A stretch of 63,256 nucleotides of DNA, counting the filler, from Olpidium bornovanus S191 (lineage: Eukaryota > Fungi > Olpidiomycota), in NCBI GenBank assembly GCA_017911155.1. It is 27 parts of 27 records of this genome, joined end to end, with 100 filler letters (N's around TTAATTAATTAA, not from the genome) between each part and the next. Parts side by side here need not be neighbours in the genome. Positions count along the whole stretch, not along the records: positions 17,236 to 19,454 come from JAEFCI010007676.1; 26 more parts are not named here. One strand, written 5' to 3'. The notes under the pieces were generated by a model that saw only the letters and a program-made list of their open reading frames with translations, was not told the origin of the DNA and did not search any database. Positions 17,236 through 19,454 of this stretch are shown here, piece by piece; the first letter of the stretch is position 1; every line of letters begins with the position of its first letter. The position numbers and the translations under genes were made by a program.

Positions 17236-19454
17236 CATGGCGTTGGACACCGGTTGAGGAGCAGAGCTTCCTCGCGCTTAAGGACCTCCTCGCTTCCGCT
17301 CCGGTCGTCACGCACCCCGATCCTCGTCGTCCCTTTGAGTTGGCGGTGGATGCCGGTCCGCGCACCATTTCCGGAAACCTTTACCAACGCGACGACAGCG
17401 GCCATCACCGCGTCTGCTATTACGGCAGCTGGAAACTTTCGCGTACGGAGCAGAATTACAGCCAGCCGGAGCGGGAATGCCTTAGTAGCCTTCCCGTATC
17501 TAGGCTCTGCATTCGGATACGTGGGGGATCCCACGCAGACCACCCCCAGCGTCCACCTGCCGGGAATACCGCCTGTATCTTCTCCATAATCCGTTTATAC
17601 TATGGACCGACTGCACCGCAATCGTCGACTTAATCAAGAAGCCGGACTTGAGTGGGAAGTTCGCCCGCTGGGTAATGTTCTTGGCTGACTTCCCCTTCGA
17701 CTGCTGCCAACACAGCGCTGCCTGCCATCGCGATGCGGACGCGCTCTCCCGCCTCCACCCCGTCGACGAGCAGGAGGGGGAGAGGCCGCAGGACGTCGGG
17801 TTGCTCGACGACGGCGTGGAGGATAACGTTCTGCTAAATGATGATTTTGGGGGCGTTCTTTGCCCCCCCCGAGGGATTTTTTGTTCTGATGATTCTGCGC
17901 ACGTCTTCCGTTCTCCGCGACGACGCCATTGACGTTGATCGGTTCGCCCTCGGTGCACGCGCACGCACTTCAACCTCTGACTGGAAGCTCCACCCGGTGT
18001 GGTTTCGCGCTATCGACGCACGGTGGGGACCCCACACGATCGATCTGTTCGCCACCACACGAAATCGCCAGCTTTCCCGATTTGCCTCTGCCGTTCCTGA
18101 GGAGGGAGCGGTCGTTGACGCCTTTTCCATCGACTGGTCCGCCGAAAACGCGTGGGCGAATCCCCTATTCGAAACGGACACGTTTTTCCGCATCCTTTCG
18201 AAGGTGCAAACGGACGGTGCGACGTTGACGCTTCGGATCCCCGCCTGGACGACCGCGCCCTGGTTCCCCGCCGTTTTGCGGCAAGCTATGGACACCCCGG
18301 TCGCCTTCCCTCGCGATTTCGACCTGTTTCTCCCTGGCGACACGGACAACCGGATCGCAGTTGGCAGTCCGAGATGGCCAGTGCTGGCGGTGCGCATCTC
18401 CGCTGCCGGAACGCCGAGCGGCCTCGATCCGCCAATTGCGGTCAGTCCGCTCCTGAACCCCGCGGACTCCGACCTCGTCTCCATCAGCCAAGCGTTAGAC
18501 CAAGAAAAACCGAGTCCTCTCTCGCCCCGGCTCCGTCGTCGTCTGTCCCAGTTTCTCCTTGTCGGCGGGCTACTGCACAAGTGCACACCAGACTGGCCGC
18601 CGCGCCGCGTCGTCCTGGCCTGCAACGAGCGCAAGAAAACGGCAATTCAAGAGAAGCTCCATGATTGCCAAAGGCACTATGGGAGCGGGTCGTCCCTAAT
18701 TCGCGTCCGCGCGCGCTATTTTTGGCCGAGGATCGAGGAGGACGTGCGCAGCTACGTCCAGAGCTGCGATGTGTGTCAACGGCGCGGGAAGCCGCGCGAC
18801 GAGGACCCACGTCGGAAGGCTCGAGTTCGCCCCCGGGTTTCTTCGAGGTATGGCACTTGGACAGCAGCGGGTCACTTCCCCCCTCCGCGGGCTTTCGCTA
18901 CTTCCAGATCGCAGTGGAACGCCTCTCCGGCTGGGTCATCGGCCACCGCACCAGGAGCAAACCAACAGAGGAAACGTCGTATACACTCGTCCAGCGCGTT
19001 GTGCGCGAGCACGGTGTGCCTATTCGGATGGTCGCCGACCGCGGAGGGGAATTCGGCCGCACATTTTGGAATCGTCTTGCCACTGTCTTCAGGATCAAGT
19101 TCAGTCGGAGAGCGGCCTGTAATCCGCGGGCCAACAACGCCGCCGAGCGCTCAGTACAGGAAGTCGGTCGCGTCCTCTCCCGGCTGATGCTGGCTCGGGG
19201 AGCCGGTTGGGGACAAGTGTTTGACGACGCCATTTGGTGCGTGAACACGAGCAGGTGTCTCTCGCAGTCGGGAGGCAGCACATTTTTCCGGAAGTACGGG
19301 TTTGAACCACGACTACCCCTGGACAACGACTCGGAGTTTGCTTTGCACGACCTGGAAGCGCAAGTTGATCATTACGCCGCCCGAATGGACTGCCTCCGGC
19401 AGCTGGAGCAGGCCCGGAAGGCCACCCTCGCCACCATCCTCCACCAGGACCATG
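17236..19454 (+). mobile_element. Ty3/gypsy pol fragment: RNase H - adenine-methyltransferase-like domain - integrase (H2C2 + DDE core), frameshifted
   Basis: RNase H: SFLALKDLLASAP...LAVDAGP...NYSQPERECL...YLLHNPFILWTDC...DADALSRL. MTase-like: DWKLHPVWFRAIDARWGPHTIDLFATTRNRQLSRF...DAFSIDWS...WANPLF...PAWTTAPWF. Integrase: HDCQRHYG...YFWPRIEEDVRSYVQSCDVCQR, then VWHLDSSG, VADRGGEF, NNAAERS. Confidence 0.88.

What the first reader, a model, noticed from the sequence alone, without database searches (positions are those of the whole stretch)
17838..19454. Integrase-type (Ty3/gypsy) retrotransposon carrying a DIRS-like DNA adenine-methyltransferase domain inside pol
Seen in sequence: between the end of RNase H (DADALSRL, ~17750) and the integrase there is a ~145-aa block (17979-~18410). 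It reads DWKLHPVWFRAIDARWGPHTIDLFAT..NRQLSRF...DAFSIDWS...WANPLF...TL.IPAW..APWF. It shares one uninterrupted ORF (17838-19187) with the integrase H2C2 finger (18660-18780), and a DDE core follows after a frameshift. Established knowledge: this DW.L..F..I...WGP..IDLFA...DAF...W.NPPF...P.W...WF signature is the Dam-like N6-adenine MTase typical of DIRS tyrosine-recombinase elements. Gypsy pol normally runs RNase H directly into integrase, as the other gypsy here does (57210-58337). Many early-diverging fungi mark active genes with symmetric 6mA at ApT. Inference: this is a chimeric LTR-retrotransposon lineage that could adenine-methylate its own cDNA or insertion site, to mimic active chromatin or evade silencing. 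In this copy motif IV is NPLF (AAT CCC CTA TTC, 18159-18170), one C>T change from NPPF, so this copy is probably dead. I cannot tell whether the architecture is already published.
Basis: partly seen in the sequence, partly recalled or inferred. Interest (0 to 1): 0.88.

Follow-up and report, generated by a model that had tools for sequence, protein, structure and literature searches.

The report
Gypsy retrotransposon with adenine-methyltransferase domain
This is a dead copy of a Ty3/gypsy-type retrotransposon from the Olpidium bornovanus (zoosporic fungus) assembly that carries a DIRS-type N6-adenine methyltransferase domain between RNase H and integrase, a design first described in a May 2026 preprint ("DAM-LTRs") whose main text names no fungus.

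Summary
The ORF at 17838-19187 encodes a roughly 155-aa methyltransferase (MT) domain. It matches Pfam Dam PF05869 above the gathering score and has 5241 homologues. The same ORF holds the integrase H2C2 finger. A gypsy-type RNase H lies upstream, and an rve DDE core follows a 1-nt deletion.

A collinear paralogue (93-96% identical) sits on Olpidium bornovanus contig JAEFCI010001238.1. Each copy has its own lesions, and the paralogue keeps NPPF. The common ancestor therefore most likely had one continuous RH-MT-IN reading frame.

Intact metagenomic proteins show the same order: PR-RT-RH-MT-H2C2-rve-chromodomain. The RNase H matches only gypsy-type proteins. The MT belongs to the family found in DIRS-type ORFs.

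The architecture is already published as "DAM-LTRs" (bioRxiv 10.64898/2026.05.21.726589). Its main text names no fungus, so this is a probable new fungal member that may lack a chromodomain.

No MT activity has been shown for any such element. The closest solved fold is the RNA cap m6Am methyltransferase PCIF1, so the substrate is open. This copy is a pseudogene. The host assignment rests on a binned metagenome.

The parts
17238..17483 (+). RNase H, N-terminal part (gypsy-type RT_RNaseH_2), same frame as the MT ORF
   Evidence: Pfam PF17919 E 2e-21. It is 95.6% identical to L001 positions 2-249.
17484..17555 (+). Private lesion 1. Here 72 nt stand where the paralogue has 13 nt, a net gain of 59 nt. 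This interrupts RNase H and shifts the frame.
   Evidence: DNA alignment A1. L001 reads through as an intact RNase H (PF17917 positions 1-105 of 105 in P0001). No source for the 72 nt was found within the piece.
17567..17760 (+). RNase H, C-terminal part up to DADALSRL, in the +2 frame relative to the N-terminal part
   Evidence: Pfam PF17917 positions 64-105, E 5e-5; translation.
17863..17870 (+). Private lesion 2. A run of 8 C where the paralogue has 7. This extra base returns the frame to that of the N-terminal RNase H, since 59+1 = 60.
   Evidence: In L001, RNase H, the linker and the start of the MT are one ORF (106-735).
17973..18437 (+). N6-adenine methyltransferase-like domain of the DIRS/DAM/PCIF1-like family, full length
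   Evidence: Pfam Dam 32.6 bits against a gathering score of 28.1. 5241 homologues. Alignment A2 shows all conserved blocks. AF2 model pLDDT 90.6. Fold matches: PCIF1 Z 11.5, T4 Dam Z 9.0.
18159..18170 (+). Motif IV reads NPLF in place of the family's nearly invariant NPPF
   Evidence: N74, P75 and P76 are at least 90% conserved across 27 relatives. The paralogue L001 has NPPF.
18438..18629 (+). Linker and integrase N-terminal extension, in frame with both the MT and H2C2
   Evidence: Translation. It aligns collinearly with L002 and P0063.
18630..18788 (+). Integrase H2C2 zinc finger
   Evidence: Pfam PF17921 E 5e-13.
18805..18808 (+). Private lesion 3. A 1-nt deletion in a C run shifts the integrase core out of frame.
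   Evidence: Alignment A1 column 1572. In L001, H2C2 and the DDE core are one ORF (858-1823).
18845..19454 (+). Integrase DDE core (rve, 18845-19126) and C-terminal region. The frame stays open to the edge of the piece.
   Evidence: Pfam PF00665 30.4 bits. The DDE residues are readable. The frame is cut off by the contig end.

Best explanation
The piece is an internal 2.2-kb fragment, probably a whole short contig, of a degenerate Ty3/gypsy-type LTR retrotransposon in the Olpidium bornovanus S191 assembly.

Its pol had this order: RNase H, a roughly 70-aa linker, a roughly 155-aa DIRS-family N6-adenine methyltransferase domain, a roughly 60-aa linker, then integrase (H2C2 finger and DDE core). 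That makes it a member of the recently described DAM-LTR class. The MT module, which is otherwise typical of tyrosine-recombinase DIRS elements, has been recombined into a gypsy pol just after the gypsy RNase H.

In active relatives the MT would be translated as part of Pol and packaged with RT, RNase H and integrase next to the element's RNA and cDNA. The near-invariant NPPF pocket points to N6-methylation of adenine in one of these nucleic acids (inferred). The published model is 6mA on the cDNA, which then recruits host AMT1 and keeps new insertions in permissive chromatin. That step is not shown for any element.

This copy cannot function. RNase H is interrupted, there are two further 1-nt frameshifts, and the catalytic motif reads NPLF.
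For: - Domain calls.
- The MT family is large, and its best-matching members outside the LTR type are RT-RH-MT ORFs with the MT at the C-terminal end.
- Paralogue L001 (JAEFCI010001238.1) is collinear and 93.5-95.6% identical. Its lesions differ from the piece's. It has a TGA inside the WGP motif, a 1-nt deletion after NPPFETDT, a 5-nt deletion in rve and a TAG in the integrase C-terminal region. Every junction (RH-MT, MT-H2C2, H2C2-rve) is therefore in frame in at least one copy.
- A second Olpidium family, L002 (69% nt identity), keeps the MT C-terminal tail, linker, H2C2 and rve in one ORF.
- Intact proteins from elsewhere have the same order: P0063 (PR-RVT-RH-Dam-H2C2-rve-Chromo), P0120, P0087/P0194 and P0071. 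They sit next to gag on 7-8 kb contigs.
- The RNase H matches only gypsy-type proteins (E 1e-25 to 1e-7). Of the roughly 140 DIRS-type ORFs it matches only one, weakly (P0122, E 9e-4).
- dN/dS between the two copies is 0.38 in the MT and 0.36 in RNase H. A one-sided binomial test gives p about 0.01 for each. This suggests the MT was constrained about as much as RNase H while the family diversified.
- GC content is uniform.
- The preprint describes the class.
Against: - No RT, LTR, PBS or gag is present in the piece, so the LTR-retrotransposon label rests on the RNase H and integrase types and on relatives.
- Only two or three copies could be seen, and all are broken. No raw reads could be obtained, so an assembly join cannot be excluded from reads.
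- The assembly is a composition-binned metagenome from non-axenic zoospores, so the host could be another eukaryote.
- The dN/dS tests rest on 22-27 substitutions per domain and ignore transition and CpG bias.
- MT activity is unproven. The E. coli assays in the preprint were negative, and Iyer et al. judged the DIRS MTs inactive.
Confidence: 0.85

Rival explanations
1. The MT block is a fragment of a DIRS element nested in, or mis-assembled into, an ordinary gypsy copy. The two Olpidium copies would then descend from one such accident by segmental duplication, not from a transposing chimeric lineage.
For: Only two near-identical copies were seen, both dead and on about 2.2-kb contigs that break at the same positions. 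No reads were available.
Against: - The block covers the whole MT domain with no DIRS RT, RNase H or recombinase sequence around it.
- It is in frame with RNase H (in L001) and with H2C2 (in both copies).
- GC content is uniform.
- dN/dS in the MT is below 1.
- A family that is 69% identical keeps the MT-tail to integrase junction.
- Unrelated intact proteins have the same order, and in the tree their MTs sit next to this one.
Confidence: 0.04
2. The element is real, but its MT domain acts on RNA or an RNA:DNA hybrid, for example N6-methylating the element's own transcript as PCIF1/CAPAM does at the cap-adjacent adenosine. It would not write 6mA on duplex DNA.
For: - The closest solved structure is PCIF1: Foldseek E 5.7e-6 and TMq 0.69; VIA Z 11.5 over 149 residues, against 9.0 for T4 Dam and 8.8 for EcoDam.
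- 16 of 27 family members also match Pfam PCIF1_WW weakly.
- Iyer et al. 2016 placed the DIRS1 MT in the PCIF1 clade.
- The dam-deficient E. coli assays for DNA 6mA were negative, and the authors themselves raise a hybrid substrate.
Against: - By sequence the family matches phage-type Dam PF05869 better (27 of 27 members, best E 1.5e-13) than PCIF1_WW (best 1.5e-5).
- No PF05869-family protein appeared among the listed structural matches, so the structural ranking may be biased if that family has no solved member.
- DAM-LTR insertions are enriched in 6mA in three species.
- A shared fold does not define the substrate.
Confidence: 0.2
3. The MT domain is a non-catalytic nucleic-acid- or SAM-binding module in all such elements. 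It would be retained for structural or targeting reasons.
For: Iyer et al. 2016 judged the DIRS1 MTs likely inactive. The heterologous assays were negative.
Against: N, P and P of motif IV and the acidic residue of the hDLFA block are invariant or at least 90% conserved across divergent relatives. That is the usual mark of a working adenine pocket. dN/dS is below 1.
Confidence: 0.2
4. The contig does not belong to Olpidium but to another eukaryote in the non-axenic zoospore preparation, such as an alga or protist. In that case this would not be a fungal DAM-LTR.
For: The assembly was binned from 187 Mb down to 29 Mb by tetramer composition and by fungal hits. NCBI labels the proteins as MAG. 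The known DAM-LTR hosts are algae, ichthyosporeans and Euglena.
Against: Three contigs from two diverged families passed the binning. No closer relative from any other organism was found in 5.8 billion proteins.
Confidence: 0.15

Closest known systems
DAM-LTR retrotransposons (Fernandez-Moreno et al., bioRxiv 10.64898/2026.05.21.726589, May 2026)
   Same: Both are Ty3/gypsy-type pol genes carrying a DIRS-derived Dam-like domain. The preprint's Chloro-Ochrophyta lineage has the DAM between RT and integrase, and its ichthyosporean lineage lacks a chromodomain. The proposed role in 6mA-marked chromatin is the same.
   Different: The preprint's main text names five lineages: Chlorophyta, Chloro-Ochrophyta, Ichthyosporea, Pyropia and Euglena. 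It does not contain the words fungi, fungal, Olpidium or chytrid. The one supplement held as text gave no hit either. The present copies come from a zoosporic fungus assembly and are all degenerate.
DIRS1-type tyrosine-recombinase retrotransposons (RT-RH-MT plus YR)
   Same: The MT domain family is the same, at 40-48% identity to the MT at the C-terminal end of RT-RH-MT ORFs. Fungal DIRS elements with this MT are known (PMC3783388).
   Different: Here a DDE integrase with an H2C2 finger follows the MT instead of a tyrosine recombinase. The RNase H is gypsy-type and matches only one of about 140 DIRS-type ORFs, weakly (P0122, E 9e-4).
PCIF1/CAPAM, the cap-specific mRNA N6-adenosine methyltransferase
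   Same: It is the best structural match (Z 11.5, 149 residues aligned, 15% identity). Iyer et al. 2016 place it in the same clade as the DIRS MTs.
   Different: Here there is no WW or helical domain. The piece itself does not reach Pfam PCIF1_WW. PCIF1 is a cellular RNA enzyme, not part of a polyprotein.
Phage and bacterial Dam, Pfam PF05869
   Same: This is the only Pfam family the domain reaches above its gathering score. The match includes the motif IV region.
   Different: Only profile positions 12-111 of 169 are matched. By the preprint's analysis, the eukaryotic domains align only with the TR-2 to CD-2 part of prokaryotic DAMs and lack CD-1 and TR-1.
Retrotransposons that captured other epigenetic enzymes (Gypsy-DNMT3 and DIRS-DNMT3, PMC5890265; orchid Ty3/gypsy with an m6A RNA demethylase domain, PMC9289625)
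   Same: The principle is the same: a nucleic-acid modification domain inserted into pol.
   Different: The enzyme family and the position in pol differ. These are known here from their titles and abstracts only.

Membership tests
DAM-LTR (Ty3/gypsy LTR retrotransposon encoding a DAM domain) | A Dam-like (PF05869) domain belonging to the eukaryotic retrotransposon MT family | tested here: met
   32.6 bits against a gathering score of 28.1. 5241 homologues. All 27 aligned relatives match Dam.
DAM-LTR (Ty3/gypsy LTR retrotransposon encoding a DAM domain) | The MT is in the same pol reading frame as gypsy-type RNase H and a DDE integrase | tested here: met
   MT and H2C2 share an ORF in the piece. 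RH-MT and H2C2-rve are each in frame in paralogue L001. The lesions are private to each copy.
DAM-LTR (Ty3/gypsy LTR retrotransposon encoding a DAM domain) | An RT of the Ty3/gypsy clade, plus LTRs | not testable with these tools
   The piece and L001 start inside RNase H and end inside integrase. The Olpidium assembly could not be searched by DNA, and no reads were listed.
DAM-LTR (Ty3/gypsy LTR retrotransposon encoding a DAM domain) | A conserved catalytic Asn-Pro-Pro triplet | tested here: not met
   This copy reads NPLF at 18159-18170. Paralogue L001 reads NPPF. The family feature is present but has been lost in this copy.
DIRS1-type YR retrotransposon | A tyrosine recombinase instead of a DDE integrase | tested here: not met
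   H2C2 and rve follow the MT. No Phage_integrase match was found.
DIRS1-type YR retrotransposon | DIRS-type RT and RNase H upstream of the MT | tested here: not met
   The RNase H matches PF17917 and PF17919 and only gypsy-type proteins.
Chromovirus (chromodomain-bearing Ty3/gypsy) | A C-terminal chromodomain after the integrase | tested here: inconclusive
   The piece ends before the integrase C-terminus. In the related Olpidium family L002, pol stops after the SH3-like part with no chromodomain. The marine relatives P0063, P0087 and P0120 do have one.
PCIF1/CAPAM family | A PCIF1-type MTase fold | tested here: met
   Top structural match, Z 11.5, about 2 units above the next. Foldseek E 5.7e-6.
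PCIF1/CAPAM family | Sequence membership (PF12237) and an N-terminal WW domain | tested here: not met
   The piece has no PF12237 match at E<=1. 16 of 27 relatives match it only weakly. There is no WW domain.

The most novel reading that the evidence does not exclude
This may be the first DAM-LTR lineage reported from Fungi, with no chromodomain in the one related copy that reaches the pol end, in the zoosporic genus Olpidium. Because the closest solved fold of its MT is the RNA cap m6Am writer PCIF1, these retrotransposon MTs may methylate the element's own RNA or its RNA:DNA replication intermediate rather than duplex DNA. That would explain the negative bacterial 6mA assays and would make them a retroelement-encoded RNA-modification device.
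Probability: 0.15. Interest if true: 0.75.

Novelty: new member of a known kind. Interest (0 to 1): 0.45.

Why it matters
DAM-LTRs were proposed in 2026 as retrotransposons that exploit the host's 6mA mark of active chromatin, and they were found mostly in hosts that encode AMT1. From my own knowledge (Mondo et al. 2017, not checked here), early-diverging fungi carry heavy 6mA on active genes.

A fungal lineage would extend the host range of the class and give an independent test of the 6mA-host association. It would also add a non-chromodomain example.

The observation further shows that two published views of this domain are compatible: phage Dam-like DNA methyltransferase and PCIF1-like RNA methyltransferase. 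By sequence it is Dam, and by solved fold it is PCIF1. This makes clearer which experiments are needed to find its substrate.

The copy itself is a pseudogene with no expected function.

Tried and rejected
- The look-up of sequencing runs listed no run. Read laying could therefore not be used, and neither the junctions nor expression could be checked from reads.
- The search for homologous proteins on the MT region of the window ORF found only the Olpidium paralogue. The word index does not reach relatives at 40-48% identity, so this says nothing about how far the family extends.
- A profile search of PDB sequences gave nothing significant. The best hits were Chk1 at E 0.39 and PCIF1 at E 0.66.
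- No internal repeat explains the 72-nt replacement in RNase H.
- A restriction-fragment origin of the contigs was considered, because both begin and end with CATG. It was dropped because an internal CATG exists at 18660 and L002 has different ends.
- The MT phylogeny could not settle whether the Olpidium capture is independent. The quick tree put the piece in an 11-row clade of mid-protein MTs (SH-aLRT 92). The careful tree grouped it with the integrase-bearing rows only weakly (UFBoot/SH-aLRT 82/36 and 79/52). The AU test did not reject a single clade (p 0.35).
- The organisms behind the metagenomic relatives could not be named.
- No paper links Olpidium with AMT1 or 6mA.
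Full report
**What is in the sequence**

The piece (17236-19454) is GC-rich at 0.57-0.64, with no compositional break. Translation and Pfam give the following features in order:

| Feature | Window position | Evidence |
|---|---|---|
| RT_RNaseH_2, N-terminal RNase H | 17238-17483 | E 2e-21 |
| Rest of RNase H, to DADALSRL, in another frame | about 17567-17760 | PF17917 E 5e-5 |
| ORF with the MT block (DWKLHP to RISAAG) | ORF 17838-19187; MT 17973-18437 | Pfam Dam PF05869, 32.6 bits for the domain alone, gathering score 28.1 |
| Integrase_H2C2, same ORF | 18630-18788 | E 5e-13 |
| rve, in the frame of the C-terminal RNase H | 18845-19126 | 30.4 bits, gathering score 32.6; D, D and E readable |

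The MT block is not a chance match. phmmer against 1.84 billion representative proteins gave 5241 hits at E<=1e-3. An alignment with 26 relatives shows every conserved block of the family.

**Is the MT part of pol, or a nested fragment?**

The best hit is P0001, at 80% identity. It lies on NCBI contig JAEFCI010001238.1 (locus L001). L001 is collinear with the whole piece at 93.5-95.6% nucleotide identity. The lesions of the two copies differ.

The piece has:
- 72 nt where L001 has 13 nt inside RNase H (17484-17555);
- one extra C in the run at 17863-17870;
- one missing base at 18805/18806;
- NPLF in place of NPPF.

L001 has:
- a TGA inside the WGP motif;
- a 1-nt deletion just after NPPFETDT;
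- a 5-nt deletion in rve;
- a TAG in the integrase C-terminal region.

As a result, RNase H, linker and the start of the MT form one ORF in L001. MT, linker and H2C2 form one ORF in the piece. H2C2 and the DDE core form one ORF in L001. The common ancestor therefore most likely had a single RH-MT-IN frame.

A second Olpidium contig, L002 (69% nt identity), keeps the MT C-terminal tail (ADNRVAVGSPRWPVLAVRV), the linker, H2C2, rve and the SH3-like end in one ORF. Its pol stops without a chromodomain.

Outside this genome, intact proteins have the same order:
- P0063: PR-RVT_1-RNaseH-Dam-H2C2-rve-Chromo, 1264 aa.
- P0120, and P0087/P0194.
- P0071: RVT-RH-Dam, then an integrase detected by phmmer.

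P0185 (same cluster as P0063) and P0194 lie next to a gag-sized ORF on 7-8 kb metagenome contigs. One of the P0194 contigs comes from a marine metagenome.

The RNase H of the Olpidium element matches only gypsy-type proteins (E 1e-25 to 1e-7). Of the roughly 140 DIRS-type RT-RH-MT ORFs it matches only one, weakly (P0122, E 9e-4). The recombination boundary therefore lies after a gypsy RNase H.

dN/dS between the two copies is 0.38 in the MT and 0.36 in RNase H. A one-sided binomial test gives p about 0.01 for each. The overall value is 0.51. This is weak evidence, resting on 22-27 substitutions per domain and ignoring transition and CpG bias. It suggests the MT was constrained about as much as RNase H while the family diversified.

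I put the nested-fragment or mis-assembly rival at about 4%. Raw reads were not available to exclude it directly.

**Host**

JAEFCI01 is Olpidium bornovanus S191. It was assembled from non-axenic zoospores and reduced from 187 Mb to 29 Mb (13,695 contigs) by tetramer binning and fungal hits. NCBI names P0001 and P0151 as MAG proteins of O. bornovanus. The piece is evidently another short contig of this assembly. The fungal assignment is likely but not proven.

**What is already known**

A bioRxiv preprint of 22 May 2026 (10.64898/2026.05.21.726589) reports DAM-LTRs. These are Ty3/gypsy-like LTR retrotransposons with DIRS-derived DAM domains. The authors claim this as the first report of DAM domains outside DIRS elements.

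They describe five lineages: Chlorophyta chromovirus-like, Chloro-Ochrophyta, Ichthyosporea, Pyropia and Euglena. They find an association with AMT1-encoding hosts, and 6mA enrichment on the insertions. Their model is that the DAM marks the cDNA or the RNA-DNA intermediate so that AMT1 then maintains permissive chromatin.

Their assays in dam-deficient E. coli were negative. The main text contains no mention of fungi, Olpidium or chytrids. The single supplement held as text had none either. Fungal DIRS elements with this MT have been known since 2013.

**Relation to other DAM-LTRs**

In a quick tree of 147 MT domains, the piece falls in an 11-row clade (SH-aLRT 92). Every member of that clade has the MT in mid-protein.

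In a careful tree of 63 rows, the piece groups with the integrase-bearing P0087, P0063 and P0120 (UFBoot 82, SH-aLRT 36). That group then joins P0071 and P0032 (79/52). One clade of all mid-protein MTs is not rejected (AU p 0.35) but appears in only 6% of bootstrap trees.

The Olpidium RNase H is closer to MT-less gypsy elements than to those of P0063 or P0087. The data fit a transfer of the MT between LTR lineages as well as they fit an independent capture. The 160 aa cannot decide between them. P0088 carries the MT after the integrase and sits elsewhere in the tree, so it is a separate arrangement.

**What the MT domain is**

An AF2 model built on the 27-sequence alignment is confident (pLDDT 90.6).

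- Foldseek's only matches at E<=1e-3 are PCIF1/CAPAM, the cap-specific mRNA m6Am methyltransferase (E 5.7e-6, TMq 0.69).
- An exhaustive VIA search ranks PCIF1 first (Z 11.5, 149 residues aligned).
- Next come RNA methyltransferases at Z 9.1-9.3, then T4 Dam (9.0) and EcoDam (8.8).

By sequence, all 27 relatives match Pfam Dam, and 16 of them also match PCIF1_WW weakly. Iyer, Zhang and Aravind (2016) had already placed the DIRS1 MT in the PCIF1 clade and thought it inactive.

The substrate (duplex DNA, cDNA, hybrid or RNA) is therefore open. The near-invariance of N-P-P and of the hDLFA acidic residue argues for a working adenine pocket in intact members.

**Verdict**

The architecture is real and belongs to a class published six months before the library date. 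This copy is a pseudogene.

What appears new is the fungal (Olpidium) host and the probable lack of a chromodomain. The function remains an inference. I assign about 0.35 to DNA/cDNA 6mA, 0.2 to an RNA or hybrid substrate, and 0.2 to a non-catalytic role, with the rest undecided.

Noticed in passing
window 17484-17555: 72 nt stand where the paralogue has 13 nt (L001 250-262), interrupting RNase H. No copy of these 72 nt, direct or inverted, occurs elsewhere in the piece. Their origin is unexplained.
   Followed up: partly
window 17236-17240 and 19450-19454; L001 1-6 and 2151-2156: The piece and the paralogous contig L001 begin and end at the same positions of the element, and both ends read CATG. 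This is probably an assembly-graph break at stretches shared with further copies, not a restriction-site effect. There is an internal CATG at 18660, and L002 has different ends.
   Followed up: partly
L002:1-1737 (JAEFCI010006802.1): This is a second, diverged Olpidium family. Only the last roughly 20 aa of the MT precede the integrase, and the 125 nt upstream are unrelated and full of stops. Pol has an in-frame stop where W is expected (KLEPD*TGPF). It ends after the SH3-like part with no chromodomain, followed by a T-rich stretch.
   Followed up: partly
P0017 and P0004 (metagenomic proteins): P0017 has a dUTPase domain directly upstream of the MT domain (dUTPase-MT-tail). P0004, whose MT is its closest relative, has the same MT-plus-tail layout. 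This is another accessory-domain combination, and their MTs sit near this piece's MT in the quick tree.
   Followed up: no
P0088 (1941 aa): The order is RVT-RNaseH-H2C2-rve followed by Dam at the extreme C-terminus. This is a different placement of the MT in a gypsy pol, and in the MT tree it sits away from the RH-MT-IN group.
   Followed up: no
P0063 residues about 655-665; alignment A2 columns 1-20: About 8 aa before its MT, P0063 has a second FSLSR. The spacing matches the ADxLSR end of RNase H in DIRS-type ORFs. It may be a relic of the donor's RNase H terminus. In the piece the same position reads RFALGAR.
   Followed up: no
window 17236-19454 against L001: 49 of the 135 substitutions between the two copies are CpG to TpG/CpA changes. 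There are 99 transitions and 36 transversions. CpG observed/expected in the piece is still 1.18. The excess of CpG transitions is mild and was not analysed further.
   Followed up: partly
L005, L006, L007 (metagenome contigs; L007 is labelled marine): These are complete elements with gag and pol (PR-RT-RH-MT-IN-chromo). They carry 19-nt tandem arrays in their terminal regions and a 9-nt periodic repeat in gag. Contigs L005 and L007 repeat their own ends about 7.9 kb apart, which suggests assembly through LTRs.
   Followed up: partly
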